A stretch of 64,000 nt of DNA, taken from the IMG/VR virus record IMGVR_UViG_3300023174_000036, positions 124,001-188,000 of that record. One strand, written 5' to 3'. The notes beneath the pieces were generated by a model. The model was not told the origin of the DNA. It ran no database searches and worked only from the letters and a program-made list of their open reading frames with translations. A program made the translations under genes and the position numbers. Below, one piece after another: positions 17,954 to 35,664 of the stretch. The stretch's first letter is position 1. Each line of letters begins with the position of its first letter.

Positions 17954-18144
17954 AATGACATGATCCTTTCTATTACTTTCTTCGCATCAGCAAATTCACC
18001 ACGATCCAACCTAGCTTCAATTTGAATTTCGTATTCTTCGCGAAGGTGTCTAAGATAAGGACGCATTTGGTAAGTGGCATACGGTTGCGTCCACTTAATA
18101 GTATAAAGATATTTTGGATTCATTCTACATCCTCTTCGAACCAT
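17950..18144 (-). CDS. hypothetical protein
   Basis: Small ORF, probable start MNPKY at 18123. Confidence 0.5.
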   Translation of the reverse strand: MVRRGCRMNPKYLYTIKWTQPYATYQMRPYLRHLREEYEIQIEARLDRGEFADAKKVIERIMSL

Positions 18145-18338
18145 TCGTCTACCATTTCTTCTGCTTCCGCTTGCGTAAGTGCAGGCACAAATAATCGAGC
18201 AGGTTGTCCTATTGTATGTTGTATATTAAATCTAACAATACCACCAGGTATGCTATTAAAATCTCGTTCAACTACAAACTCTTTTAGATTTTTTGCACGA
18301 TGTATTAATTGATTAGTTAAATCTTGGGCTGTTGTCAT
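18120..18338 (-). CDS. hypothetical protein
   Basis: ATGA-coupled to folE. Confidence 0.55.
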   Translation of the reverse strand: MTTAQDLTNQLIHRAKNLKEFVVERDFNSIPGGIVRFNIQHTIGQPARLFVPALTQAEAEEMVDEWFEEDVE

Positions 18339-19171: not shown

Positions 19172-19189
19172 TATTACTCCTATGTTTGT

Positions 19190-19218
19190 ATTATATAGGT
19201 TTATTTAGGTTTTTGCAA
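19190..19218 (-). promoter_or_regulatory. sigma70-type promoter for folE operon
   Basis: TTGCAA-17-TATAAT then AGGAG RBS. Confidence 0.65.
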
Positions 19219-19416
19219 GATATTTTCTGCTCGAAGTTTTCGACATTGTTCCTTAACTTCTAACGGAAAGTCCGGACTAATCTCTGATATTGAACAGTTA
19301 TACGCTATCACATCGCCTTTTTTTGGAAGTGATAAAAATATTATCGGAATTGCTATTAAAAATGCAACAGCAACTACGGCTATTTCTACAGTCTCTCGCT
19401 TAGTAAAATTCTGCAT
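19201..19416 (-). CDS. small membrane protein
   Basis: Single hydrophobic segment IAVVAVAFLIAIPIIFLSL. Confidence 0.5.
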   Translation of the reverse strand: MQNFTKRETVEIAVVAVAFLIAIPIIFLSLPKKGDVIAYNCSISEISPDFPLEVKEQCRKLRAENILQKPK

Positions 19417-19589
19417 AAGTCAGCATCCTTTTCGTTTTTAAAATTAAAAAACATAGCATCATGTTTTGGATGAGTTGAATATCTTTCACCAGGCAATCCG
19501 AATACTTCTAACACAATAGCACAGGTTTCATTCCACCAAAATCCATTTTGGTTATCCCATACTACGGAGACTGTATTTTCCGTAATCAC
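19386..19589 (-). CDS. hypothetical protein
   Basis: Small coupled ORF. Confidence 0.5.
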   Translation of the reverse strand: MITENTVSVVWDNQNGFWWNETCAIVLEVFGLPGERYSTHPKHDAMFFNFKNEKDADLCRILLSERL

Positions 19590-19786
19590 TCAGCCCGCCC
19601 GCTGGTGCAACTGTCATTCCACAATTCTTGTGCTTGTTTTTTATATTCATTTAATTCGTAGTCGTGTTTGGCTGTTTGATATTGCTCTTCGGTTAGCCCG
19701 TGCCAACCACAGCACTTGCCTGTTGGACTACGCCCACAACCGCATTTGCCAAACTCTTCTGGATTTTCTTTAACTCTTATTTGCAT
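19586..19786 (-). CDS. CDGSH-like Fe-S/Zn-binding small protein
   Basis: CGCGRSPTGKCCGWH resembles CxCxxS...CDGSH; start moved to MQIRV at 19786. Confidence 0.5.
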   Translation of the reverse strand: MQIRVKENPEEFGKCGCGRSPTGKCCGWHGLTEEQYQTAKHDYELNEYKKQAQELWNDSCTSGRAE

Positions 19787-20153
19787 TTTTATAGTTTCCT
19801 TTTTCTGGTATAACATGTCTAACTCCTCCACGGGGATCTTGCATATCTCCCTTACGTCTTGGAATCATATGAACGTGTGGATACATTACTGTTTGACCAG
19901 CAGCCTCGCCACAGTTTTGTCCGACATTGAAAGCGTCCCACTTGCCTGATTCGACACCCATGTAGCCAAATTTGTATGCGGCTTTGTAGCAGTCCCAGAG
20001 ATGGTCCCAGTCTTCTTTGGTAGGCACAAAAAGCAAATGTCCTTCTGTGACAGGGTATGCATCTCGAAAGACCCAATAGTCTTTAGTTCGGTATTCAATA
20101 CCGGTCCACGGTGCTCTGTTTTCATCAAGTGCTCTTTCAAGATCTGTCGCCAT
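19770..20153 (-). CDS. HIT family hydrolase
   Basis: YPVTEGHLLFVP, NCGEAAGQTVMYPHVHMIPR histidine-triad motif. Confidence 0.9.
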   Translation of the reverse strand: MATDLERALDENRAPWTGIEYRTKDYWVFRDAYPVTEGHLLFVPTKEDWDHLWDCYKAAYKFGYMGVESGKWDAFNVGQNCGEAAGQTVMYPHVHMIPRRKGDMQDPRGGVRHVIPEKGNYKNANKS

Positions 20154-20322
20154 GGGTCATTGAGTTAAGTTGGTCTTCTAAATATTTTTTATATTCTGTT
20201 AATGCTTCAACTTTGCGCGGACTAGAGCCGTCTGCTTGCAATTTTTTAATATCGTTTTCAACTATATCAATCTTAGTTTGAAAATCAGCAATCAATATTT
20301 CTGGTGGAGTTGGATTTGCCAT
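20137..20322 (-). CDS. hypothetical protein
   Basis: AAGGA RBS, coiled-coil-like. Confidence 0.55.
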   Translation of the reverse strand: MANPTPPEILIADFQTKIDIVENDIKKLQADGSSPRKVEALTEYKKYLEDQLNSMTHGDRS

Positions 20323-20331
20323 ATTATTCCT

Positions 20332-20592
20332 TTACTTGTTTGTACCAATTCGTAAGCCTGTTATGCTTCCAAATAGTAAGAAAAATGCACACCATGTTTC
20401 TACTGTTAATGGTATCTGCAACACAGGAAATAGTGTGTTTAAGCTCCATATTCCTACAATGGGGCCAAACACAACAACAATCACAATTAGTGCAATGCCT
20501 AAAATTAATTTAATAAATGCTGATGTCATAACCAAAAATCCTCCCAAGGATAAACTAACCAACAATCTTCTTCTGCTTTGTTTACAGTCCAT
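20332..20592 (-). CDS. small membrane protein
   Basis: Two hydrophobic segments; likely start MTSAFIK. Confidence 0.55.
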   Translation of the reverse strand: MDCKQSRRRLLVSLSLGGFLVMTSAFIKLILGIALIVIVVVFGPIVGIWSLNTLFPVLQIPLTVETWCAFFLLFGSITGLRIGTNK

Positions 20593-21017
20593 ACATAATA
20601 GTCTGGATCTTTAAACTGACTTGATTGATTGTGTGTTAAAACTGCAAACCGAACATTATCTCCCCAGATGCCTTCCCATTTAGGATCGTCGGAAAAACAA
20701 CCACTTGGCCAATCTTGTTTAATCCAATTAACAGTGGATCCTTGATCGTTAATATCATCGACTATAAGAATCTTTTTACCGTTAAATGCATCTTCGGCCA
20801 TACCCAAATTACTAACACAATCGCCGCCGTCTCGAAGACTAACATCTAAACTGTTCATTTTAGTGCCAGTATATTGACTAAGCAAATTAGCAGGAACAAG
20901 TCCACCTCTAGTAATGCCTACTATATAATCCGGACGCCAATAATGAACGTGCATCTGCCTAGCAATTTCTAAACATGCACCTTCTACTTGTTGCCAAGTA
21001 TAATGAATTTTTTTCAC
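20526..21017 (-). CDS. type I phosphoribosyltransferase
   Basis: IVGITRGGLVPA, ILIVDDINDQGST PRPP-binding motif, WLVYPWE. Confidence 0.9.
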   Translation of the reverse strand: MKKIHYTWQQVEGACLEIARQMHVHYWRPDYIVGITRGGLVPANLLSQYTGTKMNSLDVSLRDGGDCVSNLGMAEDAFNGKKILIVDDINDQGSTVNWIKQDWPSGCFSDDPKWEGIWGDNVRFAVLTHNQSSQFKDPDYYVWTVNKAEEDCWLVYPWEDFWL

Positions 21018-22087: not shown

Positions 22088-22475
22088 AGTGATCTGTTAC
22101 TAGTTTATAAGTTGTTACAAATTTTTCGTAGGCTATCTTTAATCCAGGATATTCTTCACACATTTTTTCAATACGTTTAAAATCAGGAAAACAATTGACC
22201 CACTCTTCCGGAAAATTTATTGTAAACGAAGAAGTATCTATGCTAGTTATTGCACCAAGTTGTGCAGTAGTCAATCCTGCAATTTGTGTAGTAGTAATTG
22301 TTGAAATCGATGAACTACTATAATAACTAGGATAAGATACTACACAAGGATTATAACCAGTTAATGTAATAGTATCACTGTTATATGTATTGTGACAGTT
22401 TATACCACTTAAATCAATAGTGTACGTATCATTTAATGTTATCGATGAGTCCGGTTGCTGAGAAGAACTGCTCAT
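22053..22475 (-). CDS. hypothetical protein
   Basis: Ser/Thr-rich, C-terminal MCEEYPGLKIAYEKF. Confidence 0.6.
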   Translation of the reverse strand: MSSSSQQPDSSITLNDTYTIDLSGINCHNTYNSDTITLTGYNPCVVSYPSYYSSSSISTITTTQIAGLTTAQLGAITSIDTSSFTINFPEEWVNCFPDFKRIEKMCEEYPGLKIAYEKFVTTYKLVTDHYDTPKDKRPKP

Positions 22476-23541
22476 GTAATGCCTCCGTTTGTTTATGTAT
22501 AGACGGAATCATATGCGTGTAGTTATCCATATATTGGATTATCTTTGCGCATAAATTTGGTCTATATGTTGTGTAGGACTCAAAATTTTCAGTCCATTCA
22601 CTAGGATATTTAAATGTATCAAAGTACATTTCAGTATAACTAAGTCTATCAGGCACTAGTGGTATAGCATCAACTACTGCACCTTCGTAGCAACTAATGC
22701 CTAAAGTTTCTTGTAAGTTAGCACTAAACACCATCTTTGCTTCGCCTAACAAGTTATGATATTCATTTTTTGTTAGATATTGATCTTGGCAAACTACAAA
22801 TTCGTATTGTGGTAAATGAGTAGCGAGATCTCTAAAAATTTCAACTTGTTTTTCTGGAGCAATCCTGTGCGGAAATAAAATTAAGTCACGCTTAGGCATA
22901 CCCTTGTACGGTAACAAAGTATCGTGCATATATTCCATGGGCCAACCAGTACGTATAATTTTAGTATACTCGCCGGCTAGTATCTCACTCAGTTCCTCTT
23001 CATACCAGGGATTTTCTGTTTGGAACCCGCCATTAAGTAATTCCCTATGAAATAACTCAATATGAAAATTGGTAGCAAAATAGTTGTGATCAAATGCGTG
23101 GAAGAAACTTTTCTCCGCATTACGTACCCAAGGTTTGCCTCCAACAAGACGTCCTAGGAAATCTTGAGGATCATAACTGCCAGCATGCCATAAGCCATGT
23201 AAGGTCCAGTTAAAGCCTAATAGGTCCGACATATATTTCAGTTGGATCACAGTGGGGTTCCACGCATCTGTAAAGATAAAGTGATCGTCGGGACTGGTCT
23301 TGCCTTGATTGTGCTGTTCCAAGAACGCACACATTTGAGCACTCTTCCAATAGTTAGTATCGGAGAAGTTTAAGAACGCACCCGGAGTCAGTTGGCTGTT
23401 CTTCTGAACACCATCTACTTGAACCACATTAAACTTGTCGCCTAACTTGTTCTTGAGTAGTGCTGGCACATGACTGTGCCACTGTGCTGTATAGCGAGTC
23501 TCAATGGGCTCCAGTGAGAATATCCATATTGTTGATTTCAA
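22429..23541 (-). CDS. GT-B fold glycosyltransferase-like protein (TTG start)
   Basis: FPHRIAPEKQ and LQETLGISCYEG resemble GT4 nucleotide-sugar binding motifs; AGGAG RBS. Confidence 0.7.
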   Translation of the reverse strand: MKSTIWIFSLEPIETRYTAQWHSHVPALLKNKLGDKFNVVQVDGVQKNSQLTPGAFLNFSDTNYWKSAQMCAFLEQHNQGKTSPDDHFIFTDAWNPTVIQLKYMSDLLGFNWTLHGLWHAGSYDPQDFLGRLVGGKPWVRNAEKSFFHAFDHNYFATNFHIELFHRELLNGGFQTENPWYEEELSEILAGEYTKIIRTGWPMEYMHDTLLPYKGMPKRDLILFPHRIAPEKQVEIFRDLATHLPQYEFVVCQDQYLTKNEYHNLLGEAKMVFSANLQETLGISCYEGAVVDAIPLVPDRLSYTEMYFDTFKYPSEWTENFESYTTYRPNLCAKIIQYMDNYTHMIPSIHKQTEALHEQFFSATGLIDNIK

Positions 23542-23588: not shown

Positions 23589-23606
23589 ATATATTTTGCT
23601 CATTCT

Positions 23607-24828: not shown

Positions 24829-24831
24829 TCT

Positions 24832-24990
24832 TCAACTCCCGACTGTTAATCGTTTAGTCACCTTGCTATACCTTAGCCAAACGATTTTTGATCCATAACG
24901 GAACCTAAATCCAAGGCTACTTTTATCACCGATCGGATAAAAGTTAAAACCATTGCGGATCACTCCGCCTTCCTCTGTGATATGTATCAT
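24832..24990 (-). CDS. 52 aa hypothetical protein (not in ORF track)
   Basis: MIHITEEGGVIRNGFNFYPIG...VGS; ATGA overlap with endonuclease stop, ends in junction repeat. Confidence 0.55.
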   Translation of the reverse strand: MIHITEEGGVIRNGFNFYPIGDKSSLGFRFRYGSKIVWLRYSKVTKRLTVGS

Positions 24991-25587
24991 TTCTTTTCCT
25001 TACAGTTATCAAAGTGGTATCTCTTCATACCGCTAACTCCGCCTTGTTTAGCACAGTGAGGACAAACAAGTACAGGTTGTAGTGTTCCTTTCAGCGAAGT
25101 AGAAACACCCAATCTACCAGAAGGCAATCCCTTCCTACGCTTATTTGATTCTGATATATGTGGAGCAGGACCAGTTGCCTTGCCCTTGTTCCAAGGTGTT
25201 ATACCTTTCTTATGGATAGCATTGGCTTTACTTGTACTGGGCATTTTAACTCCAGCAGGAGCACCATCTAATCCATTCTCCGGAATCATATTAGCCCATA
25301 CTTTCTTGCCACGGGAATCTACAGCATCTACTATGTTATGGAATTCACTAAAGAATGTAGCAAACTCTACCAACTGATCCATGTCAGTAAATTCTTCACA
25401 CCATACAGTTGTGATATCTTCGCTGTGTTCTTTTAAGTGTCTCAACCAATACTTACCAGAACCCAAATAGGTCTGTGGGTCCTTGGTAGTCTTGCCAAAG
25501 TATCGTAGTCCAGTGGTATTGTGTTGCTTGATATAAAGCCAGGTTGGCTTAAATTCCGGTGATGGAATATTACTATAAATATTCATG
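24987..25587 (-). mobile_element. GIY-YIG (Seg-like) homing endonuclease gene with NUMOD3-like repeats
   Basis: WLYIKQHNTTGLRYFGKT, YLGSGKYW, PWNKGK, ISESNK, C-terminal CPHC...HFDNC; likely start MNIYSN at 25587 behind AGGA. Confidence 0.8.
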
Positions 25588-25649
25588 CTGATAGTTCCTA
25601 ATAAACTGTTAGAGTCAGTGGATGTTGGTAGCATCGCGACTGGCACTTT

Positions 25650-25657
25650 TATTTATA
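25650..25657 (-). promoter_or_regulatory. canonical T4 late promoter TATAAATA driving the endonuclease
   Basis: Exact TATAAATA overlapping the stop codon of the truncated GT fragment. Confidence 0.7.
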
Positions 25658-25928
25658 CAGAACAGTTAGAAAGAATAAGACTGTCGCCGGAATGAACGGC
25701 TCCGTTACAAAATAAACGGCCCATTTGCTCAACCTGACTAGCCTTGTATATATTGGTACCACCAAAATTAAGGAAAGCACCAGGAGTAGTGGCTGTAGGA
25801 ATATCCTCAGGGCCAGAGATAATTTGAACATGGTGTCCTGCCTTTTTAAGAAGTTTAGGCACATGGGATTTCCATTGTCCCGTGTACCGTGTTTCAACAG
25901 CTTCTAGATCAATTATGAATATGTTCAT
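25653..25928 (-). pseudogene. orphan N-terminal fragment of a glycosyltransferase homologous to 22429..23541
   Basis: LEAVETRYTGQWKSHVPKLL and TPGAFLNFGGTN match LEPIETRYTAQWHSHVPALL and TPGAFLNFSDTN; frame ends after about 82 homologous residues. Confidence 0.8.
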
Positions 25929-26173: not shown

Positions 26174-26184
26174 TGTAGCTTTCC

Positions 26185-26589
26185 TTAGTACTTAATAAAT
26201 GAACCATTTTCTCCGTCTTCGGAGACTTCAATCCAGACCTCACGGTCTGGATACTTTTGTGAAATAGTGTCGTACAATTCGTCCGACATCATTTCGCAAC
26301 TCTTGTGATCTAGCGACAAAACACCTTGTGTGCTAGAATACAGTTGTTCAAGCCATCGCTTGAATTGTATGAATTCCACATCTCGGTCATTGTGGGTAAC
26401 ACTAAGCCATACCCTAAAATGAAAGATGTGACGATGAGGATAACCCAGAAACGATACATCATATTCATCTCCTGTAGCTAAGTTAGGGTTTGTTAATGCC
26501 GCTGGGTATTTGTGAATACCCTCCTTACGAAATGTAACCCAAATCATTTTGTTAGGGCGGATGTCTTGTTTAATAATCATTTTAGTCAA
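26185..26589 (-). CDS. QueD-like T-fold protein (DpdL-like candidate)
   Basis: FLGYPHRHIFHFRV, DVEFI.FK, SCEMM, EVSEDGENG; lacks the CxxxHGH of canonical QueD. Confidence 0.65.
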   Translation of the reverse strand: MTKMIIKQDIRPNKMIWVTFRKEGIHKYPAALTNPNLATGDEYDVSFLGYPHRHIFHFRVWLSVTHNDRDVEFIQFKRWLEQLYSSTQGVLSLDHKSCEMMSDELYDTISQKYPDREVWIEVSEDGENGSFIKY

Positions 26590-27130
26590 AGAACCTTTCT
26601 CTAGATTGAGATGTACGAGAGATGCTTATAATTTTTTTCATAGATTTAACTGGAATTCTAATCCTAACAGAATTTTCATGGCCCCAGCAATCTCCAACTA
26701 GATACTTATTAGGTCCATAAATGTCTTTAGAAGAATTGCCTTGCAATACTTGTTTGGCAATATAATTATAGTCTTGTTCAAATTTTTCTTGTATTTCGTT
26801 ATCAGTCATATCAACATTTATAGGTTCTTTAGTAATCCTAAAAATTGGATCTGTTAAAACTACTTCTTGTTTCTGAACTTTTTTATAGATATCAGTTTTA
26901 TTCCACGGCAAAGTTTTTATATTATCTATAGTTATAGAACCTTGAGAGTACGACGAATTGCTGTATATACTATGACTTTTTATTTCAGTACCTTCTGTTG
27001 GCATATCTACAGGCCCAACACGATCTATAATATTTCCTGCTTTTTCGTATGCGTCTTCGATAAATCGACCGTCAGAGCCGTCATTTCTTTTTTTTGGTAG
27101 CAGTGTTCCTGCCGGTATACGTTTAATCAT
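26582..27130 (-). CDS. PD-(D/E)XK nuclease-like protein
   Basis: GRFIE...G...GPVDM...TEIKS spacing like MutH/NaeI-type nucleases; start moved to MIKRIP at 27130. Confidence 0.45.
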   Translation of the reverse strand: MIKRIPAGTLLPKKRNDGSDGRFIEDAYEKAGNIIDRVGPVDMPTEGTEIKSHSIYSNSSYSQGSITIDNIKTLPWNKTDIYKKVQKQEVVLTDPIFRITKEPINVDMTDNEIQEKFEQDYNYIAKQVLQGNSSKDIYGPNKYLVGDCWGHENSVRIRIPVKSMKKIISISRTSQSRERFFD

Positions 27131-27666
27131 AATGTTGTATCTTGTGTGTACTGATCCCAATGAGTATACTTGTCTTTACTCATTAAGCTCTGTAGGTGAT
27201 GTGTCCACACACCTGGATTTGTAGCACCCCAAGTTCGGTCGTCCAGTTTAAGTGTGGCATTATAGTTGAGTTGATTAATGTAAGGTAACTTGACACTAAT
27301 CATAGGGACAAAGCGAGGATATTCGTTATAAGCAGATTCCAATACACCTTCAATGTGTTCAACACCGAAGTCCAATGAAACCCAATAGTCGGCTTTAAGG
27401 CAACCAATAATAACTTCATCCCACGCTTTATATTCTTCTTGCGAGATAGATTTGGGATTAAAACTTTGACTAGTGCCAAAGTAAATGTGTTTAATGCGTT
27501 TAGACTCGTCTAACAGTGCTTGAGTGTCGTCTGCCTTACGCAAAATTTCTTCAAGTGGAGGAGTGCCCACTACAAATAGTGTAAACATACCATAACAAAT
27601 AGTATGCTCGACTTCATAACCTGTAAAGTATACGACGTCTTGTCGTTCTTCAGTGTTTAGTCCCAT
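27127..27666 (-). CDS. conserved-looking hypothetical protein in modification cluster
   Basis: FTGYEVEHT, HIYFGTSQSF, KLDD...ATNPGVW. Confidence 0.65.
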   Translation of the reverse strand: MGLNTEERQDVVYFTGYEVEHTICYGMFTLFVVGTPPLEEILRKADDTQALLDESKRIKHIYFGTSQSFNPKSISQEEYKAWDEVIIGCLKADYWVSLDFGVEHIEGVLESAYNEYPRFVPMISVKLPYINQLNYNATLKLDDRTWGATNPGVWTHHLQSLMSKDKYTHWDQYTQDTTL

Positions 27667-28547
27667 TTGATATAACCTCTGCTGTAACCGTTTGGACGAT
27701 CCTTACCATCCGCAAACGCTTGTTGCCACTCTATGTTTCTATTATAACCTCTAGTCCAAAAAGAATCAACCTCAAGTTCACCGTTTTCAATCATCCAACG
27801 TGCTTGATGCATGGCTGTGATAAATCGAGACGTTCTTGGACTAGGTTTAACTGTGGTAACAGCTTTCCAAAGTTGCTGTTGTGCTTCTTCTTTGGTTACT
27901 GCTTTACCAACGGCATCTATAATTAGTGCTTCGTTATTTAGGTTAATATCTGTACCTATATCATATTTTCCTGATAAGTCCACGACAATGTCATAACTTT
28001 CACTGGTCCACAATAACAAAGTGTCTCCCCAGAGATCTATGTTATTAGATCCCAATGCGTCAACATCCATATCTGGAAAATGATGTTTTAAATTATTAAA
28101 AACAACCCAAGCAAGAAATCCGCTACCTAAGATCAAACATTTACCTTTGGATCTGCGTTCAAATTCTTCGTATGCTTGACTAACACAATTAATACCACAA
28201 GCAACTGGTTCTAAAATATATTTTGGATGTGCTTCTGGAACTTGTACATATTCATTGGCACGTACATTATAAAAGTCTGCGTATGCTGGTTCACCCCGAG
28301 TAGCAACAAAGTCGCCTTTTGCAAGACCAGTGACACCAGCACCCATTTCAATTACTTGACCCAAGCCTTCGTGTCCTTGCATACTAAGTGGCAATGGTCC
28401 AAAATTACCTTGCATCATATCAATGTCGCTACGACATACGCCTGTCATGATAGCTTGTACACGAATATCAGTAGGCCCTAGTGGAGGCAATTCATAGGTT
28501 ACTTCTTCAAAGTAACCTTGACCTGTAGTTTGCAAACAGCGTGTCAT
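27657..28547 (-). CDS. Zn-dependent alcohol dehydrogenase (MDR) family protein
   Basis: GVCRSD, GHEGLG, LEPVAC, LILGSGFL. Confidence 0.85.
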   Translation of the reverse strand: MTRCLQTTGQGYFEEVTYELPPLGPTDIRVQAIMTGVCRSDIDMMQGNFGPLPLSMQGHEGLGQVIEMGAGVTGLAKGDFVATRGEPAYADFYNVRANEYVQVPEAHPKYILEPVACGINCVSQAYEEFERRSKGKCLILGSGFLAWVVFNNLKHHFPDMDVDALGSNNIDLWGDTLLLWTSESYDIVVDLSGKYDIGTDINLNNEALIIDAVGKAVTKEEAQQQLWKAVTTVKPSPRTSRFITAMHQARWMIENGELEVDSFWTRGYNRNIEWQQAFADGKDRPNGYSRGYIKWD

Positions 28548-29428
28548 AGATTTTCGATCCTTTCATGGATCCACGAATCTTGTTTATATTGCTCAAGCCA
28601 AAAAGTCTGATTATCTATATTTTTAATAGCATCAGAAATCATATTCTGATAAGCATATTCTGGACAAAGGCCTAACTCAACAGTAATCACGCTGTCGTCT
28701 TCCATAACAAATTCGATATTTCTTTTATCAGATTTTAAATCTCGCCAATCAGCAGTTAGTTGCCATTTGTCTGTAAAATTAATTTGACAAAAATCATCTA
28801 CATCATACGTGCCATTAACATTAACAGTTCCGTAATCTGTGCCAGTCAATTGACCCAGTGTCCACCTTTTAAATGCAGTTTGCTTAGTCAAGTTAGCTCT
28901 AATCCAGTCTGGTGCCAATGCTATGAACCAACTTAACAAGTGAGGCATTAAATCTCTACTAACACCACCAAATGCCAGTTCTTTATTAGTAAACCAACTA
29001 CCTGGATTTGGTATACGATCTTTGTTAATCCAATTAAGATTAACTTTTTTAGATTTATTTGCTAAATCTTTTAGCTCAACAATGTTGTCTCGCCACATAT
29101 TATTTTTGACCATCATAAAACGTGTAAACGGTCTGGTCTTAATCATACCAGTCCAGTCGTTACTTGTTTTGAATCCTGGCTTTTCAACAAACACTATTTT
29201 AGTATAAGGTGCTACCTGTTCGGCTATGTCTTTATGCGTAAAATTTGGCGTACAAATATGTGCAGTATCAAAAATACTATATTTTCTAATAGCATCTGCA
29301 ACACTAGTAAACTCAGCACCTTTGGAAGGATCCATATCTACTGTAATAACTGTGTGCCCAATATTTTCTAGGACAGTCTTGTATAACTGTCCAATACCCA
29401 TACCGATAACGAGACTACGCTTGTTCAT
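28544..29428 (-). CDS. Gfo/Idh/MocA family oxidoreductase
   Basis: VIGMGIG Rossmann, ICTPNFTH, VEKP, GGVSRDLMPH. Confidence 0.85.
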   Translation of the reverse strand: MNKRSLVIGMGIGQLYKTVLENIGHTVITVDMDPSKGAEFTSVADAIRKYSIFDTAHICTPNFTHKDIAEQVAPYTKIVFVEKPGFKTSNDWTGMIKTRPFTRFMMVKNNMWRDNIVELKDLANKSKKVNLNWINKDRIPNPGSWFTNKELAFGGVSRDLMPHLLSWFIALAPDWIRANLTKQTAFKRWTLGQLTGTDYGTVNVNGTYDVDDFCQINFTDKWQLTADWRDLKSDKRNIEFVMEDDSVITVELGLCPEYAYQNMISDAIKNIDNQTFWLEQYKQDSWIHERIENL

Positions 29429-29660: not shown

Positions 29661-29697
29661 TTTATAGCTCTTTTTGTGAAAGTTTTCGCGGGTGATG

Positions 29698-31431
29698 TTA
29701 TTCGTGTACACTAGCTTCTAATTCGTCTAGTTTGTTATCATCAAATTCAAGGTCGTCTTCTAATTGTACAATATCTTCTTGGACTTCTTCAAAGAATTTG
29801 GAGTACATAGTTGATGCATTAACTGTTTTCTTACCAGTTGCGCCACGTGTACCAGGTATAGCTTGCCAAAATTTATCATAATAATCAATAATTGCCATTG
29901 CTGAATCTCTATCTGGCGCACTAAAGATAGCGTCTACAACATCTCTAAATTTATTTGGTAACGGAGAGTAATCTGTAAATGGTTTTGGTATAGCTGTAGT
30001 AACATCTAACATGCCAGGACATAACCCAGCATCATATTGACGATTGGCTTCTTGTACGCTGTTCAAATGTAGCCACACATTATGACCCATCATAATAGCA
30101 TAGGTAAAACTATCCCAACTTGTTTTACCAACTTTACCGATTTTGTTTACATCGTTAGGACCATAGATGCAAATGTCTTTAACTTCCACACCGTCCATTA
30201 GCGGACTAGTAGTAAACGATTTAAAATGACCATCTTGCACAACCACATCTTGGAACAGTCTAGTGTCTTTGCTGTACTTTTTGTTGTCTAAACTTGGCAA
30301 CATACGGTAGAGCCATTTTTCTCTATCTGTAATTTCTGTTTGAACATAAATTTGTCCATTAGCTGTAGCAAGAAAAGGACTAGCACAATCAAAACTAATT
30401 GTAAAACTGGGATTATGATATTTTCGAATAGCACGTTGTATATCTGTCAGCAACAACGCCCATTCTAATTTACTTGTTCCAAGAAAGTGCATCCAGTCTT
30501 GATGACCTTGTTCTAACAAACCGTCAAACTTTAATGCAACAAGTCTACGCAGTACTAGATCTACGTCACACATATTCTGCCCACCCATGGCCCAGCCATT
30601 AAATGGCTTGTCATATTTCTTTGGGTCGCAAAAGTCTTTCATTTGTTGATACCAGTCTTCTGCTTGGTCGTGGTTTTCGCCTTGTAATACATTTAAGAAT
30701 TTACAAGCGCCTGTGCGATGTTTGATAAAATATTCGTTATTATATTTGGTAGCCGCGACAGCTTGTGGATAATTACCAACGCCGCTATTTTTAGCACCAA
30801 CAGGACTTCGACCAACCCATGCTGGAATATCTAGCACCATGCCATAATCCATTAGTGCATCCATCCATGCTAGTACTTGTTCACGTTTTTTCTGTGCCGC
30901 ATCTAATTGTGCTTGATACAGTTTAACATGATCAATCTTAGTATACTTAGGATTACCGTTTTTATCTGTCTTAGGATGACCTGTTGGGTGTAATTGAGGA
31001 ACTAGTTCAACACCTTTGGCAACGGCTTCGGCCATACGTTGTGCTACTACTGGACCGTTAGGATCATTCCATTCGCCTGCCCATACGCCTTTACCAATCT
31101 GGAAACCTCCAGAGTCGCCTAACACCCAACTAGTGCTACGGTCTCTGTTACGAAACATGTCTTCACTAGGATCTGGTTTAGTCAAATCTAAGTTAGCATG
31201 ACCAGCAGAATACAAACAATGGTCAAAGTAAAATGCCGCATTGGGATTCAAATAGTTCATAGCTTCAATGCCCATAGGCCCAAAGCTAGCAGGAATACGT
31301 GCAGGATCCACGTAGTTGCTATATCTCTGTTTACCTATATATGTACTATAGAATCCTGAAGTTGCCGGCAAAAAGTAAGCATACGGTTCACCAGAGGCAT
31401 CAAATTGTGCTTTCGTTAGATTTTTATTCAT
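29698..31431 (-). CDS. dpdA: DpdA-like DNA guanine transglycosylase (TGT fold)
   Basis: LGDSGGFQ, MVLDIP, NVLQG, AMGG, HFLGTS, SFDCASP TGT motifs; no C-terminal Zn cluster of tRNA TGT; queE/folE context. Confidence 0.8.
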   Translation of the reverse strand: MNKNLTKAQFDASGEPYAYFLPATSGFYSTYIGKQRYSNYVDPARIPASFGPMGIEAMNYLNPNAAFYFDHCLYSAGHANLDLTKPDPSEDMFRNRDRSTSWVLGDSGGFQIGKGVWAGEWNDPNGPVVAQRMAEAVAKGVELVPQLHPTGHPKTDKNGNPKYTKIDHVKLYQAQLDAAQKKREQVLAWMDALMDYGMVLDIPAWVGRSPVGAKNSGVGNYPQAVAATKYNNEYFIKHRTGACKFLNVLQGENHDQAEDWYQQMKDFCDPKKYDKPFNGWAMGGQNMCDVDLVLRRLVALKFDGLLEQGHQDWMHFLGTSKLEWALLLTDIQRAIRKYHNPSFTISFDCASPFLATANGQIYVQTEITDREKWLYRMLPSLDNKKYSKDTRLFQDVVVQDGHFKSFTTSPLMDGVEVKDICIYGPNDVNKIGKVGKTSWDSFTYAIMMGHNVWLHLNSVQEANRQYDAGLCPGMLDVTTAIPKPFTDYSPLPNKFRDVVDAIFSAPDRDSAMAIIDYYDKFWQAIPGTRGATGKKTVNASTMYSKFFEEVQEDIVQLEDDLEFDDNKLDELEASVHE

Positions 31432-32174
31432 TACTTAGACTGTGCTGGAAGAATATAATCGTATACTGCAACACCGCTGTCGATGTTAATGTTCAACAAC
31501 CCACCATCTGCAATACGCATAGTAGCAGTACCGCTTAGTCCAAGAATACTTTGAACTTGATTAACGGGCCACGACCATGTTTGTTTTAGTTTGCCTTTGA
31601 CATTTGCTTGGAAAATAAAACTACCAGCGTGTGTGCTTGAATCACCAAAGCTAAACACCAAATGACCGTCTTCTGTTTTAACTTGAAAAACAGTTTCTTC
31701 TGAATGTGCATTTGATTGGAATTTCAATTTCTGTATACTGGCAACAGCAGGCGTAAATTCAATATCCCACTGTGCGCCTTTGAACTTGGCCGACTTCAAT
31801 TTGTCGTTAATAATGTCCTGGTTCATGAAACGATAATCGTTTTCAAAGTCAGCAGTTGCATTGATAAAATGCAAACCTGTTGGAACTTCTTCTCCGTTAC
31901 GTTGCTGTTTAACTACCTTGATAGTTGCACCTTCTTTGTACTCTGGACACTTGAGGTGAATATCTAGCTTGTTCAAGTTAGGCATGCCAAAGGTGCCTTC
32001 AAAGTCACTGACTGGTTCGTGCGCTTTGGCATTCAAAATAACGCTACGATCTTCAGCCATAGATTCGATTGTAGTTTCTTTGTCTGTTGCACTTACCTTG
32101 ACCAAAGGTAAAAAGCCCAAACTGTGTGTATGTGCTACTAGGTCTTGTAAAAAGTCTTTCATGAGATTCTCCAT
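31431..32174 (-). CDS. probable DNA sliding clamp/processivity factor
   Basis: About 245 aa alpha/beta pattern, SMAEDRSVI, ends YDYILPAQ like PCNA/gp45; near PolB. Confidence 0.55.
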   Translation of the reverse strand: MENLMKDFLQDLVAHTHSLGFLPLVKVSATDKETTIESMAEDRSVILNAKAHEPVSDFEGTFGMPNLNKLDIHLKCPEYKEGATIKVVKQQRNGEEVPTGLHFINATADFENDYRFMNQDIINDKLKSAKFKGAQWDIEFTPAVASIQKLKFQSNAHSEETVFQVKTEDGHLVFSFGDSSTHAGSFIFQANVKGKLKQTWSWPVNQVQSILGLSGTATMRIADGGLLNINIDSGVAVYDYILPAQSK

Positions 32175-32182
32175 ATGTTATG

Positions 32183-32211
32183 ATTATACTTAGGTTTTTT
32201 GATTATGTCAA
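32183..32211 (-). promoter_or_regulatory. perfect sigma70 promoter for clamp-dpdA operon
   Basis: TTGACA-17-TATAAT. Confidence 0.8.
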
Positions 32212-32981
32212 GCATTTTTTCTTACCGTTTCATTGTATTCCGCCGAAGCTTCTAAAATACTAAACGGTGCATTGATAGTTTTGGCATATTTTATAAATGC
32301 TTGAGTGTCTTTAGGAAAACACGCACCACCAAAACCACGTTCCCCATCAAGCCCAGGTACTAAGGTATGACTGGAACCAATTCTTTGATCATGTGTAATC
32401 ATTTGACGCACTATTGAATAGTCTGCACCATTTGCCTCACATATATCAAACAGTTGATTAAAAAAGGCTACTTTTGCCGCTAGGAAAGAGTTTATACTGT
32501 ACTTGGTCATAGCCGCTTCTAATTTAGTACATTGAAAAAACAGTTTACAATTAGGCAATACTGAACTAAAAGTCTCCTGCCAAAATCCTTCAGGATCTTC
32601 ACCGCCAATAATCATAAACTTTTGTTCGGCAAAGTCCTTAGCAGAAGTAGCCGCCCGTAAAAATTCTGGACTATACACAACGGAATGATCTTTATATACA
32701 TCATCGAATGCTTCCAGCGCACTAGGTGTTACAGTGCTTTTAATCATTACCGGCATAAAAATTGGCACTGTATCTAAAATATCAGCGATGTTTCGGACAT
32801 CACATATGCCATCTTCTGTGGTAGGAGTATTCACACAGATAATTAATCCGTCTGCATCTGGATGATCTTTTATTTGTTCTTCGGTATATTTTGGATCAAC
32901 AATTACAATTTCGTGTTTAGTTTGTAATGTTTGTCCAACTGCTTTGCCAACAAATCCGTATCCTGCAATTATAATTTTCAT
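32208..32981 (-). CDS. UDP-glucose/GDP-mannose dehydrogenase family protein (short form)
   Basis: IAGYGFVG, ICVNTP, IKSTV, SPEFL, TKYSINSFLA.K, FGGACFPKD; start moved to MKIII at 32981. Confidence 0.85.
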   Translation of the reverse strand: MKIIIAGYGFVGKAVGQTLQTKHEIVIVDPKYTEEQIKDHPDADGLIICVNTPTTEDGICDVRNIADILDTVPIFMPVMIKSTVTPSALEAFDDVYKDHSVVYSPEFLRAATSAKDFAEQKFMIIGGEDPEGFWQETFSSVLPNCKLFFQCTKLEAAMTKYSINSFLAAKVAFFNQLFDICEANGADYSIVRQMITHDQRIGSSHTLVPGLDGERGFGGACFPKDTQAFIKYAKTINAPFSILEASAEYNETVRKNA

Positions 32982-32982
32982 A

Positions 32983-35664
32983 TTAGAACTCGAAAAAACT
33001 GTTAAAGGTATTCTTTTCTTCTGTGCTGTTGATATCCCAGTTAAGAACACCAATTAAGTTGTCTAATTTATTATCAATAATTGTCTGTTCCATTTCGGCA
33101 TGATCAAATGCTAAATCTTTAAACCACTGCGGAAGTCGCAACTCGTCTACCGGATAAGCAACACTAGTAAAACCTAGTGCATTAGGTTTTAGTTTACATA
33201 CAATAACTTTAGCACCGTCTGTAATAGCCATGCTATACTTGTCTCCGTACATGCGTTTTAATGTGTTCCAATTAATACTTGCACGAACGTGACCAGGCAT
33301 ATTAGTCTTGCCAGCTTTGGCTTCTTTGGCTTGGTAGTCTGTAATGTTGTTGGCACGTTTTGGACTGCCTTTTTCCCAACCGGGACGAGCTTTAAATCGA
33401 ATTCTAAATTCACTAATATGATCCAATACTTGTTGTTCAGTTGCACCTGTCAATACTAGTTCAAGTACATCACTTAAAAAGTTTTGAATAAATTCAGGCG
33501 TGTCACTACGCTTGAGGTCCAACCCCATGGCTTTAATTTTGCCGGGTTTACCTTCAACGTCTGTACGTTTGCCTTCTTTGTCGTAATACAACACAGCATA
33601 ACGCTTCTTGGTAATAAACAAACTTTTACTACCAACAATCTCACGACCTGCTTTGATAACTTCTCCACGCGACTTGGGCACGTGAAACGAATCCAACATA
33701 AACTGTGGAAATGTACTGTTAACTTCCTCACCAATTTGGTCGTACAACTGAACAACTGATTCTTTAGTCCACGGCAACTGCCCTGCATTGATTTCTTTTT
33801 CCAATGTTTTATATGCTGAGAAATAACATGAGTCTGTATCACCGTAGATAATAGCTTTGCCTGTGTGATTGTATTCACCCGCAATAATCTCATTAACTTT
33901 ACTGGCCATGTGTTTAGCAATAGCACGACCTGTTAGTGTAGTTGATTGTCCGATACGCTTGTCAAAGAATCTACAACCGTTGTTAAGAATAGCACCATAC
34001 AAACTGTTCAAGTTAATTTTCTTGACTAGTTGTCGTTTGTCCCAGTATTCTTCTTCAACCTTATTGCCGGCTTTGATAGCTTCTTTAAGTTTAGCCTGCA
34101 TCTCTTTACGTTCAGCATACCAACGCTTTAACAAGCCAGGAATAATACCTTCTTTTTCATACGTGAAAATTGTGCCGTTGGCACTGAGGATCCACGGCTG
34201 GTTGCTTTCGTAAATTAATCTATACACTTCTGCGGCACTGACAACATCAGTGTCGCCGTTCTCCCAGTCAATAGTAATGTCTGTGCCAATTTCTTGATTT
34301 ATCACAGCAGTATACTCTAATGATCCAAACACACCTTCCCATGCCGCCGCAAAACTCTTACCTTTTGCTACAAGATTATCAATGTATTCTTGCGTAAGTG
34401 TTTGACGTAACTGCCCTACAATGGTCTCTGGCCCCATGTTAAGTGCTCTAATAGCACTAGGATACAGTGAGTTAATGTCTAGTGAACCGATCCAATCATG
34501 GATGCCTTCTTTAGGATAAGCAACATACGCACCTGCGGCCCCCTCGTTGCCTTCTCTGTCGTCCATTTTAGTTCTGTTGGGAACTTGGAAACCTCTGCGG
34601 TGTGCTTCGTTAATAATAGCCTGCTCAGTCACAGCCACAGCACCCATTGTAGTCTGTAACAACACAGTACATTCATGTGCCAGCGTGTTAGCAAGGTCCA
34701 TGAATTTTAATTTCTTGTCTAATTTTTCAAGAAGCATACAGTCATTGATGTTGTATTCAATGAAAGTTCTAAAATCATTGTTGTACAACTGATCCAATGT
34801 GCCTTCGTATTGCGTCTTACGCTCACCTAGTTCGTATTCAGCAATAGCATCCAGTCGATAGGTATGACGTTCTTCATAAGTATACTTTCGATACAGTTCA
34901 AGACTATCCAAGTGTACACGACCAATAAAGTCGTATGTAACAGCTTGTCTTCCATATTTTTCATATTCACGTTTCTTTGGCAATTGGTCAAACAAACAAA
35001 AACGTCTTGTATCTTCTTTGCTTAATGCCTTGGTCACACGATTAACCGTGTAGGGAATATCAAAGCCTTCGCTGTTCCAACCACTCAGTACATCAGCATC
35101 TTTGATCAAATCCAAGAACACATCCAACATCTCTGCTTCTGTTTCATACAGCATTACGTTGTCAAAGTCTTTGACCATTTCTTTGGCATCCGCCATGTTG
35201 AGTTTCTTGGGTGGCACAGCCAAACATATCATTGTTTCCATCCATTGTAGGTAAACAGCAATCGCAGTGATTGGCATAAATGCATCATCGGGTGACGCAT
35301 AGCCACGCTCTGGGTCGAAGTCTACTTCAATATCGAAAAATGCTACATTTAGTTTGGGAGGTTCTGCGTTTAGATAGTTTTCGCTTAGACAAACAAAGAT
35401 GGGGTTAATGTCTGCTTCAAACAGTTTTTTGCTTGAATTAATAGCTTGTTCTTTTCTTAGCTCTTTGGTATTTTTACAAATAATACGTGTGAGTGGATCA
35501 CCGTAAATACTTTGAAATTTGCCCTTGGGGTCTTTAAAGTAAAACGTGTGTTTGACAGGAATGTCACGGAACTCACGTTCTTGTTTTTTATTACGTTCGA
35601 CCACTTTAATAACGTCATTCTCGCGGTCAAACCATGCGTCTACATAGCTCAATATATTCTCCAT
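32983..35664 (-). CDS. family B DNA polymerase (T4 gp43-like)
   Basis: FFDIEV exonuclease, DINSLYPS, KINLNSLYG, YGDTDS, KKRY; true start may be TTG 35652. Confidence 0.97.
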   Translation of the reverse strand: MENILSYVDAWFDRENDVIKVVERNKKQEREFRDIPVKHTFYFKDPKGKFQSIYGDPLTRIICKNTKELRKEQAINSSKKLFEADINPIFVCLSENYLNAEPPKLNVAFFDIEVDFDPERGYASPDDAFMPITAIAVYLQWMETMICLAVPPKKLNMADAKEMVKDFDNVMLYETEAEMLDVFLDLIKDADVLSGWNSEGFDIPYTVNRVTKALSKEDTRRFCLFDQLPKKREYEKYGRQAVTYDFIGRVHLDSLELYRKYTYEERHTYRLDAIAEYELGERKTQYEGTLDQLYNNDFRTFIEYNINDCMLLEKLDKKLKFMDLANTLAHECTVLLQTTMGAVAVTEQAIINEAHRRGFQVPNRTKMDDREGNEGAAGAYVAYPKEGIHDWIGSLDINSLYPSAIRALNMGPETIVGQLRQTLTQEYIDNLVAKGKSFAAAWEGVFGSLEYTAVINQEIGTDITIDWENGDTDVVSAAEVYRLIYESNQPWILSANGTIFTYEKEGIIPGLLKRWYAERKEMQAKLKEAIKAGNKVEEEYWDKRQLVKKINLNSLYGAILNNGCRFFDKRIGQSTTLTGRAIAKHMASKVNEIIAGEYNHTGKAIIYGDTDSCYFSAYKTLEKEINAGQLPWTKESVVQLYDQIGEEVNSTFPQFMLDSFHVPKSRGEVIKAGREIVGSKSLFITKKRYAVLYYDKEGKRTDVEGKPGKIKAMGLDLKRSDTPEFIQNFLSDVLELVLTGATEQQVLDHISEFRIRFKARPGWEKGSPKRANNITDYQAKEAKAGKTNMPGHVRASINWNTLKRMYGDKYSMAITDGAKVIVCKLKPNALGFTSVAYPVDELRLPQWFKDLAFDHAEMEQTIIDNKLDNLIGVLNWDINSTEEKNTFNSFFEF

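What the first reader, a model, noticed from the sequence alone, without database searches (positions are those of the whole stretch)
26582..27130. Restriction-like PD-(D/E)XK nuclease embedded in the modification cluster
An AT-rich ORF with E...D...EIK spacing reminiscent of MutH/NaeI-type nucleases is translationally coupled between cluster genes. It could be a phage restriction arm that cuts unmodified host or competitor DNA while deazaguanine protects self, which would make a phage-encoded R-M-like system. Alternatively it is a second free-standing homing endonuclease.
Basis: inference. Interest (0 to 1): 0.6.

Follow-up and report, generated by a model that had tools for sequence, protein, structure and literature searches.

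The report
Optional MutH-like nuclease in phage G-modification cluster
A freshwater jumbo phage carries a small, intact MutH/Sau3AI-type DNA-cutting enzyme inserted as an optional gene inside its 7-deazaguanine DNA-modification cluster. It may be a phage "restriction arm" or a selfish homing-type nuclease, and only a cleavage assay can tell which.

Summary
Window 26582..27130 (-) is a real 182-aa gene. It is AT-rich (GC 0.33 against 0.39-0.40 in the flanks) and its ATG overlaps the stop of the upstream gene.

With a 121-sequence alignment AlphaFold gives pLDDT 96.4. The best solved match is E. coli MutH (Z 16.0, rmsd 3.0 A, 169 residues), then Sau3AI, BcnI and MvaI. E25, D42, E49, K51 and K84 align with MutH E56, D70, E77, K79 and K116. 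D42 and K51 are invariant in the family.

The neighbours form a guanine-modification cluster: a TGT-like protein, a DpdL-signature T-fold protein, GTP cyclohydrolase I and a radical-SAM enzyme. The nearest cultured relative, PA5oct, has modified G by experiment.

The new result is that the nuclease is optional. Relatives with 98-99% identical core genes lack it cleanly. Relatives whose nuclease is only 28-35% identical carry it in the same slot.

The fold and an intact catalytic site are well supported. The function is not shown. My best guess (0.4) is a short-site endonuclease tolerated because the phage's own G is modified. A free-standing homing-type nuclease is the main rival (0.3).

The parts
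26582..27130 (-). MutH/Sau3AI-fold endonuclease gene, 182 aa (P0001). Predicted catalytic codons: E25 27056-27058, D42 27005-27007, E49 26984-26986, K51 26978-26980, K84 26879-26881.
   Evidence: ORF and translation. AF2 model with pLDDT 96.4. MutH Z 16.0 / rmsd 3.0 / 169 aa and Foldseek E 4e-6. Residue mapping to MutH. Family invariants. dN/dS 0.145.
27127..27666 (-). Upstream 179-aa gene (p179) of unknown function. Its stop overlaps the nuclease ATG. It looks enzyme-like, with many invariant polar residues.
   Evidence: Alignment A3. The family has >=7875 clusters. It occurs without the nuclease in PA5oct and in L027-L029. It is not MutH-like (hhalign probability 0.3%).
26185..26580 (-). Downstream DpdL-like T-fold gene, 131 aa from the ATG at 26580. 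It carries the signature L-x3-H-R-H-x-F instead of QueD's C-x3-H-G-H.
   Evidence: phrog_17812 hit. Motif found in all eight metagenomic orthologues checked. The signature is defined in PMC10516641. The start codon is read from the junction sequence.
27119..27130 (-). Left cassette boundary. The nuclease start ATGATTAAAC resembles the dpdL start.
   Evidence: Junction comparison with the nuclease-less relative L027.
26566..26584 (-). Right cassette boundary: nuclease TAA, one base, then the dpdL start ATGATTATTAAAC. A deletion between the two similar starts would reproduce the nuclease-less allele exactly.
29698..31431 (-). 577-aa divergent TGT/DpdA-like protein with a DSGGFQ motif. It is the presumed DNA guanine transglycosylase.
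   Evidence: No Pfam TGT hit. Language-model neighbours include viral clusters carrying PF01702. Homologues in PA5oct and Vibrio phage 2.275.O sit beside QueE, QueF, QueC and FolE.
27657..29428 (-). ADH_N-type (27657..28547) and GFO/IDH/MocA-type (28544..29428) oxidoreductase genes. They are cluster members in the window's clade only.
   Evidence: Pfam. Absent from the L002, L010 and L011 clades.
16405..21017 (-). Rest of the pathway: radical-SAM QueE-like (16405..17262), GTP cyclohydrolase I (18335..19171), HIT (19770..20153) and phosphoribosyltransferase (20526..21017).
   Evidence: Pfam.
22429..23541 (-). 370-aa gene that I call glycosyltransferase-like by eye only; no family scan matched it. 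It is conserved next to the cluster.
   Evidence: Synteny. No family hit.

Best explanation
Shown:
- The gene encodes a compact, single-domain member of the MutH/Sau3AI/BcnI/MvaI branch of PD-(D/E)XK endonucleases with a complete catalytic set (E25, D42, E49, K51, K84).
- It belongs to an uncharacterised, mostly viral family of proteins about 190 aa long.
- It is an optional cassette placed exactly between p179 and dpdL, inside a 7-deazaguanine-type guanine-modification cluster of a 356-kb freshwater phage.

Inferred:
- Like its solved relatives, it probably binds a short site (about 4-5 bp) as a monomer and nicks or cuts DNA with Mg2+.
- A 356-kb genome cannot avoid such sites, so the enzyme is tolerable only if the phage's own DNA is refractory. 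The obvious cause is replacement of G by a 7-deaza derivative. That removes N7 and fills the major groove where such enzymes read guanine.
- It would then act on unmodified DNA, either the host chromosome or co-infecting phages. This would be an R-M-like pair comparable in logic to T4 EndoII/EndoIV with hmC.
- Tight linkage and co-translation with the modification genes would keep the nuclease from ever being inherited without its antidote.
For: Fold: MutH Z 16.0, rmsd 3.0 A, 169 of 182 residues; Sau3AI Z 11.8, BcnI 9.2, MvaI 8.8. Foldseek E 4.3e-6, probability 1.0. Model pLDDT 96.4.

Catalytic residues align to MutH E56, D70, E77, K79 and K116 and are invariant or nearly so in 121 relatives. 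Thirteen of those 121 relatives hit Pfam MutH directly. Twenty-two of 30 language-model neighbours are MutH/Sau3AI clusters.

The gene is under purifying selection, dN/dS 0.145.

In six separate lineages whose nucleases are 28-87% identical to the window's, the gene always lies between the p179 homologue and dpdL, next to the TGT-like gene.

Modification genes occur without the nuclease (L027, L028, PA5oct). In this subfamily the nuclease was never seen without them. That asymmetry is what an R-M pair predicts.

PA5oct DNA resists G-containing restriction sites and is targeted by nucleases specific for modified G (PMC12191111).

GATC and other 4-mers are not depleted in the genome: 1157 GATC sites, O/E 0.97. 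Self-protection by site avoidance is therefore unlikely.
Against: - No cleavage data, no site specificity and no evidence of discrimination between modified and unmodified DNA.
- TGT-type modification is thought to be post-replicative (PMC10516641), so nascent phage DNA would be transiently vulnerable.
- Near-identical phages do without the gene, so it is dispensable.
- Clean presence/absence, AT-richness and a variable slot also fit a selfish mobile nuclease.
- Family members outside this subfamily sit next to HNH and T5orf172 genes rather than recognisable modification genes.
- MutH itself is nearly inactive without MutL, and the phage has no MutL or MutS.
Confidence: 0.4

Rival explanations
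1. It is a free-standing homing-type (selfish) endonuclease. It cuts the nuclease-less allele of related phages near the p171/dpdL junction during co-infection and is copied in by repair. On this reading its position inside the modification cluster only reflects a conserved target site.
For: - L027 and L028 have polB 98%, p247 99% and p82 99% identical to the window's, but no nuclease. The flanks are 97-99% (p179 3' end) and 91-94% (dpdL) identical in DNA right up to the gene.
- The boundaries are exact.
- The slot holds a 63-aa ORF or a 333-aa radical-SAM gene in other relatives.
- AT-richness persists across clades.
- Nuclease divergence is out of step with the flanks. L013 flanks are closer to the window than L002 flanks, yet the L013 nuclease is 31% identical against 52% for L002.
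- A second homing-endonuclease-like insertion lies about 1 kb away in the same genome.
- Other family members neighbour HNH and T5orf172 genes.
Against: - The protein is one 182-aa domain, almost fully superposable on MutH, with no added DNA-binding module for a long site.
- No MutH-type homing enzyme is known to me (own knowledge).
- No co-conversion signal: the window's flanks resemble the nuclease-less L027 more than the nuclease-bearing L005.
- The pattern fits ancestral presence with loss through the start-codon microhomology equally well.
Confidence: 0.3
2. It is a site- or structure-specific nickase serving the phage's own DNA transactions. It could prime recombination-dependent replication. 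It could also mark the unmodified nascent strand in the way MutH marks the unmethylated strand.
For: MutH is a monomeric nickase that reads the modification state of one strand (established knowledge). The fold match is closest to MutH-DNA complexes. The gene is co-oriented and coupled with replication-adjacent genes such as polB and the RNase H-like 5'-3' exonuclease.
Against: - Close relatives and PA5oct do without it.
- The genome has no MutS or MutL and no Dam.
Confidence: 0.12
3. It is a modification-dependent nuclease aimed at DNA carrying a different mark, such as host methylation or a rival phage's modification.
For: The structural neighbourhood includes methyl-directed enzymes at lower scores: DpnI Z 6.9, NhoI and Eco15I Z 6.6-6.8.
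Against: Those scores are in the range of a generic PD-(D/E)XK core. No separate sensor domain is present. Nothing in the context points to a specific foreign mark.
Confidence: 0.08
4. It is a helper of the transglycosylase or a non-catalytic DNA binder.
For: Constant adjacency to the TGT-like and DpdL genes.
Against: The catalytic residues are invariant. The modification cluster exists without it in PA5oct, whose DNA is modified.
Confidence: 0.03

Closest known systems
E. coli MutH (PDB 2AOR, 2AOQ, 1AZO, 2AZO)
   Same: Best structural match: Z 16.0, rmsd 3.0 A over 169 residues. The catalytic residues E56, D70, E77, K79 and K116 all have counterparts. Both are single-domain proteins.
   Different: - The target is 182 aa against 229 aa, with about 14% identity and no direct Pfam PF02976 hit.
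- The C-terminal recognition region (MutH R184-K186, Y212) could not be mapped reliably. MAFFT and the structural ranges disagree.
- The genome has no Dam, MutL or MutS.
- It is encoded by a phage, next to guanine-modification genes.
Type II restriction enzymes Sau3AI, BcnI and MvaI
   Same: Same structural clade: Z 11.8, 9.2 and 8.8. BcnI and MvaI are monomers that cut short 5-bp sites. One family member weakly hits PADLOC REase_II.
   Different: No methyltransferase partner. The presumed protection would be a transglycosylase-installed 7-deazaguanine. The target is much smaller than Sau3AI, which has two MutH-like domains. The upstream p179 is not a second MutH-like domain.
T4 endonucleases II and IV (DenA, DenB) with hmC DNA
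   Same: Functional analogy only (own knowledge). These are phage nucleases that attack unmodified DNA while the phage's modified DNA is spared.
   Different: Different folds and a different base (C against G). T4 modification is pre-replicative. No activity data exist for the present protein.
Free-standing homing endonucleases of T4-like phages (Seg and Mob proteins)
   Same: Patchy presence among close relatives, insertion between conserved genes, AT-rich gene.
   Different: Those are GIY-YIG or HNH enzymes with added DNA-binding domains (own knowledge). This one is a bare MutH-like domain.
Phage 7-deazaguanine clusters with DpdA3 and DpdL (Cellulophaga phiST; Campylobacter phages; PMC10516641)
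   Same: FolE and QueE-like genes, a T-fold protein with the DpdL signature, and a TGT too divergent for Pfam. No QueC was found.
   Different: That paper's text mentions nucleases only as host enzymes facing viral DNA, not as part of those clusters. This cluster adds UDP-glucose dehydrogenase and GFO-type and ADH-type oxidoreductase genes, plus a 370-aa gene with no family hit that I read as glycosyltransferase-like.

Membership tests
MutH/Sau3AI endonuclease family (PF02976, PD-(D/E)XK clan) | MutH-type fold over the whole domain | tested here: met
   Model pLDDT 96.4. MutH Z 16.0, rmsd 3.0 A, 169 of 182 residues. The next matches are Sau3AI, BcnI and MvaI.
MutH/Sau3AI endonuclease family (PF02976, PD-(D/E)XK clan) | Catalytic residues equivalent to MutH E56, D70, E77, K79 and K116 | tested here: met
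   E25, D42, E49, K51 and K84 by hhalign (probability 72%, E 3.4e-5) and MAFFT. D42 and K51 are invariant. E49 and K84 are >=90% conserved in 121 sequences.
MutH/Sau3AI endonuclease family (PF02976, PD-(D/E)XK clan) | Match to the Pfam model above its cut-off | tested here: not met
   No PF02976 hit for the protein or the genome. Thirteen of 121 profile-linked relatives match at E<=0.01, best 2.3e-7. Membership is therefore remote, resting on structure and transitive links.
MutH/Sau3AI endonuclease family (PF02976, PD-(D/E)XK clan) | GATC recognition, methyl-sensing Y212, activation by MutL | not testable with these tools
   The C-terminal alignment is ambiguous. The genome has no Dam, MutL or MutS. 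GATC is not depleted.
Restriction-modification-like pair (nuclease plus protective DNA modification) | Nuclease gene linked to genes that modify the DNA | tested here: met
   In all six lineages sampled the nuclease lies between p179 and dpdL, next to the TGT-like gene.
Restriction-modification-like pair (nuclease plus protective DNA modification) | Modification may occur alone, but the nuclease does not occur without it | tested here: inconclusive
   This holds within the subfamily. Three more distant family members lie in other contexts whose modification status is unknown.
Restriction-modification-like pair (nuclease plus protective DNA modification) | Cleavage is blocked by the cognate modification | not testable with these tools
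   Needs an enzyme assay.
Free-standing homing endonuclease | Presence/absence polymorphism at one locus among close relatives, with exact boundaries | tested here: met
   L027 and L028 lack it, with flanks 97-99% (p179 3' end) and 91-94% (dpdL) identical in DNA.
Free-standing homing endonuclease | Co-conversion of flanking markers with the nuclease gene | tested here: not met
   The window's flanks are closer to the nuclease-less L027 than to the nuclease-bearing L005. Only three genomes were compared, so this is a weak test.
Free-standing homing endonuclease | Long, rare target site, usually read by an added DNA-binding domain | tested here: not met
   The structural alignment to single-domain MutH spans model residues 1-175 (169 aligned). 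No extra domain is present. Site length itself was not measured.
Free-standing homing endonuclease | Cuts the nuclease-less allele near the insertion point | not testable with these tools
   Needs an assay on the L027-type junction.

The most novel reading that the evidence does not exclude
A phage-borne restriction-modification-like module in which the 'methylase' is a DNA guanine transglycosylase pathway installing a 7-deazaguanine derivative, and the restriction arm is a minimal MutH-type enzyme that reads the presence or absence of guanine N7. It may work in a strand-specific way, as MutH does with methyl-adenine. The roughly 245-cluster viral mini-MutH family would then be a widespread, unrecognised class of phage weapons against unmodified DNA.
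Probability: 0.3. Interest if true: 0.75.

Novelty: new variant of a known kind. Interest (0 to 1): 0.55.

Why it matters
Phage 7-deazaguanine modification is known only as a shield against host restriction. A nuclease genetically welded to that pathway would suggest the modification is also used offensively, to tell self from non-self DNA, as T4 does with hmC.

It would also give a compact enzyme sensitive to 7-deaza-G, which is useful because 7-deaza-dGTP is a common PCR reagent. It would assign a function to a family of about 245 viral protein clusters that currently has none.

If it is instead a homing nuclease, it would add the MutH fold to the set of homing enzymes. It would also show that modification clusters are hot spots for selfish genes.

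Tried and rejected
- Direct annotation. Pfam, PHROGs, NCBIfam and PADLOC gave nothing significant for the protein. Only a weak DUF5853 hit appeared (E 0.019).
- PDB sequence searches, with the single sequence and with both profiles, gave nothing.
- tblastn against 50,697 phage records with the protein and with two relatives gave nothing. Megablast of the region also gave nothing.
- The first AlphaFold model, built from 13 sequences, left the catalytic N-terminus unfolded (pLDDT <50). It was replaced by the 121-sequence model.
- Site-specificity clues. GATC is not depleted. GCWGC is strongly depleted in this genome (O/E 0.24), but that does not track nuclease presence or subtype across relatives, so it is probably host R-M avoidance.
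- p179 as a second, Sau3AI-like MutH domain was rejected (hhalign probability 0.3%).
- p179 as a dedicated partner or antidote was rejected. It is present in PA5oct and in L027-L029 without the nuclease, and it belongs to a family of >=7875 clusters.
- A phage MutHLS system was rejected. The genome has no MutS, MutL or Dam.
- 'Core, vertically inherited gene' was my interim view. It was overturned.
- Context census of other family members.
- BFVD's best structural match, a Synechococcus phage S-CAM7 protein, could not be located by sequence in the S-CAM7 record that is held.
- Promoter and terminator scans were at chance level.

Full report
**1. The object**

Window 26582..27130 on the minus strand is an ATG-to-TAA ORF of 182 aa, P0001. 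It is markedly AT-rich. A 400-nt window centred on it has GC 0.295, against about 0.39-0.41 on either side. The gene has GC 0.326 and GC3 0.219, while its neighbours have GC 0.39-0.40.

Its ATG overlaps the stop of the upstream 179-aa gene (ATGA). Its TAA is followed after one base by an ATG at 26580, which is the start shared by all orthologues of the downstream gene. The ORF lister's TTG start at 26589 is probably not used.

The window is bases 124001-188000 of a 356,312-bp IMG/VR virus record that CheckV estimates to be 96% complete. Near-identical DNA occurs in freshwater and lake metagenomes from at least 12 studies.

**2. What the protein is**

No curated family, PDB sequence or cultured-phage record matches it directly.

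The word-index search found 13 metagenomic homologues at 50-99% identity. The exhaustive profile search then found 245 representative clusters, mostly 180-200 aa. In an alignment of 121 of these, D42 and K51 are invariant. G21, G32, E49, K84, Q114 and R158 are at least 90% conserved. Thirteen of the 121 hit Pfam MutH on their own, best E 2.3e-7.

With that alignment AlphaFold2 gives pLDDT 96.4 and pTM 0.90. The 13-sequence model had left residues 1-59 disordered.

- Foldseek against the PDB ranks five MutH chains first (E 4.3e-6 to 5.9e-4, probability 1.0), then Sau3AI.
- VIA-align gives MutH Z 16.0 (rmsd 3.0 A, 169 residues aligned), Sau3AI 11.8, BcnI 9.2 and MvaI 8.8. Generic restriction-enzyme cores follow at Z 5-7.
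- A protein-language-model search independently returns MutH/Sau3AI clusters for 22 of 30 neighbours.

E. coli MutH was taken from the K-12 record. Profile-to-sequence alignment with it (probability 72%, E 3.4e-5) and MAFFT both place E25, D42, E49, K51 and K84 on MutH E56, D70, E77, K79 and K116.

The gene is under purifying selection: dN/dS is 0.145 with dS 0.53 against the 87%-identical L005 copy.

I could not map the C-terminal DNA-reading residues of MutH (R184-K186, Y212). The sequence alignment and the structural ranges disagree. Site specificity is therefore unknown.

**3. The surroundings are a guanine-modification cluster**

On the same strand lie these genes:

| Gene | Coordinates | Evidence |
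|---|---|---|
| Family-B DNA polymerase | 32983..35664 | |
| UDP-glucose dehydrogenase-like | 32208..33053 | |
| 247-aa protein | 31431..32174 | no family hit |
| 577-aa protein with DSGGFQ motif | 29698..31431 | see below |
| GFO-type and ADH-type oxidoreductases | 27657..29428 | |
| p179 | 27127..27666 | |
| The nuclease | 26582..27130 | section 2 |
| 131-aa T-fold protein | 26185..26580 | see below |
| 370-aa protein (glycosyltransferase-like by eye; no family hit) | 22429..23541 | |
| Phosphoribosyltransferase, HIT, GTP cyclohydrolase I, radical-SAM protein | 16405..21017 | |

The 577-aa protein has no Pfam TGT hit. Its language-model neighbours include viral clusters carrying PF01702. Its homologues sit in queuosine-type clusters:
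- in Pseudomonas phage PA5oct, in a cluster that also holds QueE;
- in Vibrio phage 2.275.O, in a cluster with QueF, a queuosine-biosynthesis (QueC-like) protein, a predicted vitamin-uptake transporter and FolE.

The 131-aa protein and all eight metagenomic orthologues checked carry L-x3-H-R-H-x-F and not QueD's C-x3-H-G-H. The published work defines L-x3-H-R-H-x-F as the signature of DpdL, the proposed 7-carboxy-7-deazaguanine decarboxylase found in phages that have DpdA, FolE, QueD and QueE but no QueC (PMC10516641). No QueC was found in this genome.

PA5oct has a polymerase 50% identical to the window's and the same gene order. Its DNA is reported to resist several G-containing restriction sites and to be attacked by defence nucleases specific for modified G (PMC12191111).

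'Embedded in the modification cluster' is therefore supported. The exact base is not known.

**4. Distribution: fixed slot, optional gene**

The nuclease occupies the same position, between the p179 homologue and dpdL and next to the TGT-like gene, in six separate lineages:

| Lineage | Nuclease identity to the window |
|---|---|
| L005, L006 | 87% |
| L002, L010 | 50-52% |
| L011 | 35% |
| L030 | 34% |
| L013 | 31% |
| L024 | 28% |

In a quick maximum-likelihood tree, eight such sequences form one clade (SH-aLRT 90). P0018 (locus L030) falls just outside it in an unresolved region.

At first this looked like a vertically inherited core gene. It is not.

- Contigs L027 and L028 have polB 98%, the 247-aa protein 99%, the TGT-like protein 91%, DpdL 92% and the 82-aa protein 99% identical to the window's. 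They are closer than the nuclease-bearing L005, yet they have no nuclease. Their p171 stop overlaps the dpdL ATG directly.
- DNA identity between the window and L027 is 0.97-0.99 over the last 300 nt of p179 and 0.91-0.94 in dpdL. Between the window and L005 it is 0.79-0.85 and 0.72-0.82.
- The nuclease begins ATGATTAAAC and dpdL begins ATGATTATTAAAC. A deletion between these two starts would produce the L027 allele exactly. An insertion preserving them is equally possible.
- In L029 the slot holds a 63-aa ORF with a hydrophobic N-terminus. In the P0201 contigs it holds a 333-aa radical-SAM gene.
- PA5oct has no homologue anywhere in its genome. It does have a p179 homologue elsewhere.
- p179 belongs to a family of at least 7875 clusters, against 13 close clusters for the nuclease.

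The nuclease is thus a dispensable accessory gene and is not part of the biosynthetic pathway.

More distant family members sit in other contexts. Two lie after an HNH gene and a T5orf172/GIY-YIG-like gene, beside DNA ligase. One lies after MazG.

**5. Mechanism**

The solved relatives are monomers that read 4-5 bp. MutH is a nickase at GATC. BcnI and MvaI cut both strands of 5-bp sites one after the other. This is established knowledge. The structural alignment to MutH spans model residues 1-175 with 169 residues aligned, and there is no extra domain.

A 356-kb genome contains hundreds to thousands of copies of any such site. GATC occurs 1157 times with O/E 0.97, and no 4-mer is strongly avoided. 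The phage must therefore be protected chemically, or the enzyme must be latent.

The simplest reading is that the 7-deaza substitution makes phage DNA refractory. The substitution removes N7 and puts a substituent in the major groove. The enzyme would then attack unmodified DNA, that is the host chromosome or co-infecting unmodified phages.

The genetic asymmetry fits an R-M-like pair: modification genes occur alone, but this nuclease subfamily was never seen without them. So does linkage tight enough that recombination cannot separate poison from antidote. I give this reading 0.4.

The main rival (0.3) is a homing-type selfish nuclease.
- For it: clean presence/absence among near-identical genomes, a variable slot, persistent AT-richness, nuclease divergence out of step with the flanks, and a second homing-endonuclease-like insertion 1 kb away.
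- Against it: the bare single domain, and no co-conversion signal in the three genomes compared.

The two readings are not exclusive, since restriction genes themselves behave as selfish elements.

Lesser rivals:
- A nickase for the phage's own replication, recombination or strand marking. The genome has no MutS, MutL or Dam, and the gene is dispensable in close relatives.
- A modification-dependent enzyme.
- A non-catalytic helper.

**6. Expression**

A metatranscriptomic library (X7) yields contigs identical to 26807-27095, inside the gene, and to 27089-27907. The second contig crosses the p179-nuclease junction into the ADH-like gene. The same library has no coverage over 24976-26748.

This is compatible with transcription and with co-transcription with p179. 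These are assembled contigs from an RNA library that may contain DNA, so it is not proof.

**7. Verdict**

- The structural interpretation (MutH-type PD-(D/E)XK nuclease) is confirmed.
- The cluster context is confirmed.
- The functional claim is untested but remains the most economical reading.
- It is a new variant of a known kind: a minimal viral MutH-like family, here used as an optional cassette in a deazaguanine cluster.
The standard genetic code was used throughout.

Noticed in passing
window 23541-25928 (compare L009 9663-11005): A roughly 2.4-kb insertion lies between the 82-aa gene and the 370-aa gene that I call glycosyltransferase-like by eye. It holds a 91-aa N-terminal fragment of that gene (25653..25928), which is 92% identical to the intact gene of the 99-100% identical strain L009. 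It also holds a 219-aa ORF (24987..25646) with a GIY-YIG-like LYI...YFG motif seen by eye (no family hit), and five small ORFs. L009, L005 and L027 lack the insertion. The full-length gene that follows is only 83% identical to L009's. This looks like the footprint of a homing-endonuclease-driven allele replacement.
   Followed up: partly
whole genome G000 (356,312 bp): Several restriction-type sites are strongly avoided despite the presumed G modification: GCAGC/GCTGC O/E 0.24 (z -17.7), GTGCAC 0.12, AAGCTT 0.22, CTGCAG 0.30 and AGCGCT 0 observed of 50 expected. ACGCGT and GCGCGC are absent. GCWGC avoidance is present in L005 and L011 but not in L002, L010 or L013, so it does not follow the nuclease.
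   Followed up: partly
window 24296-24828; also L025 593-808 and L026 10648-10881: Two tandem paralogous small ORFs (71 and 106 aa, both starting MNERI[KR]ELA) lie in a stretch with very high contig depth and many joints in all four runs laid. Homologues lie near MutH-like family members in unrelated contexts. This looks like a widespread multi-copy small phage gene family.
   Followed up: no
window 27127-27666: p179 has about 50 invariant residues across 43-88% identical orthologues, among them E18, E20, H60, D99, K140, D142-D143, N150 and H156. It belongs to a family of at least 7875 clusters, all annotated as hypothetical. In PA5oct it follows two genes of about 290-300 aa. It is probably an unrecognised enzyme.
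   Followed up: partly
window 27657-29428 and 22429-23541: The ADH-like, GFO-like and 370-aa (glycosyltransferase-like by eye) genes are far more diverged between strains (66-88% protein identity, DNA down to 0.6) than polB or the 247-aa gene (97-99%). The cluster is mosaic and diversifying.
   Followed up: no
L029 6516-6707; P0201 contigs (no DNA held): The slot between p17x and dpdL is a variable site. It holds a 63-aa ORF with a hydrophobic N-terminus in one relative and a 333-aa radical-SAM gene in another.
   Followed up: partly
window 26578-26589: The mechanical ORF call starts the DpdL-like gene at a TTG (26589). Comparison with orthologues shows that the ATG at 26580..26578 (MIIKQD...) is the conserved start.
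   Followed up: yes
window 16405-33053: No QueC and no Pfam-detectable TGT were found in the genome. A phosphoribosyltransferase, a HIT protein and sugar-nucleotide enzymes are present. The final base may be a further-decorated deazaguanine rather than plain dDG.
   Followed up: no
BFVD A0A7D5JWA5 (Synechococcus phage S-CAM7): The best viral structural match is a 196-aa uncharacterised cyanophage protein (E 2.5e-9, TM 0.66). The family profile found nothing in the S-CAM7 record that is held.
   Followed up: partly
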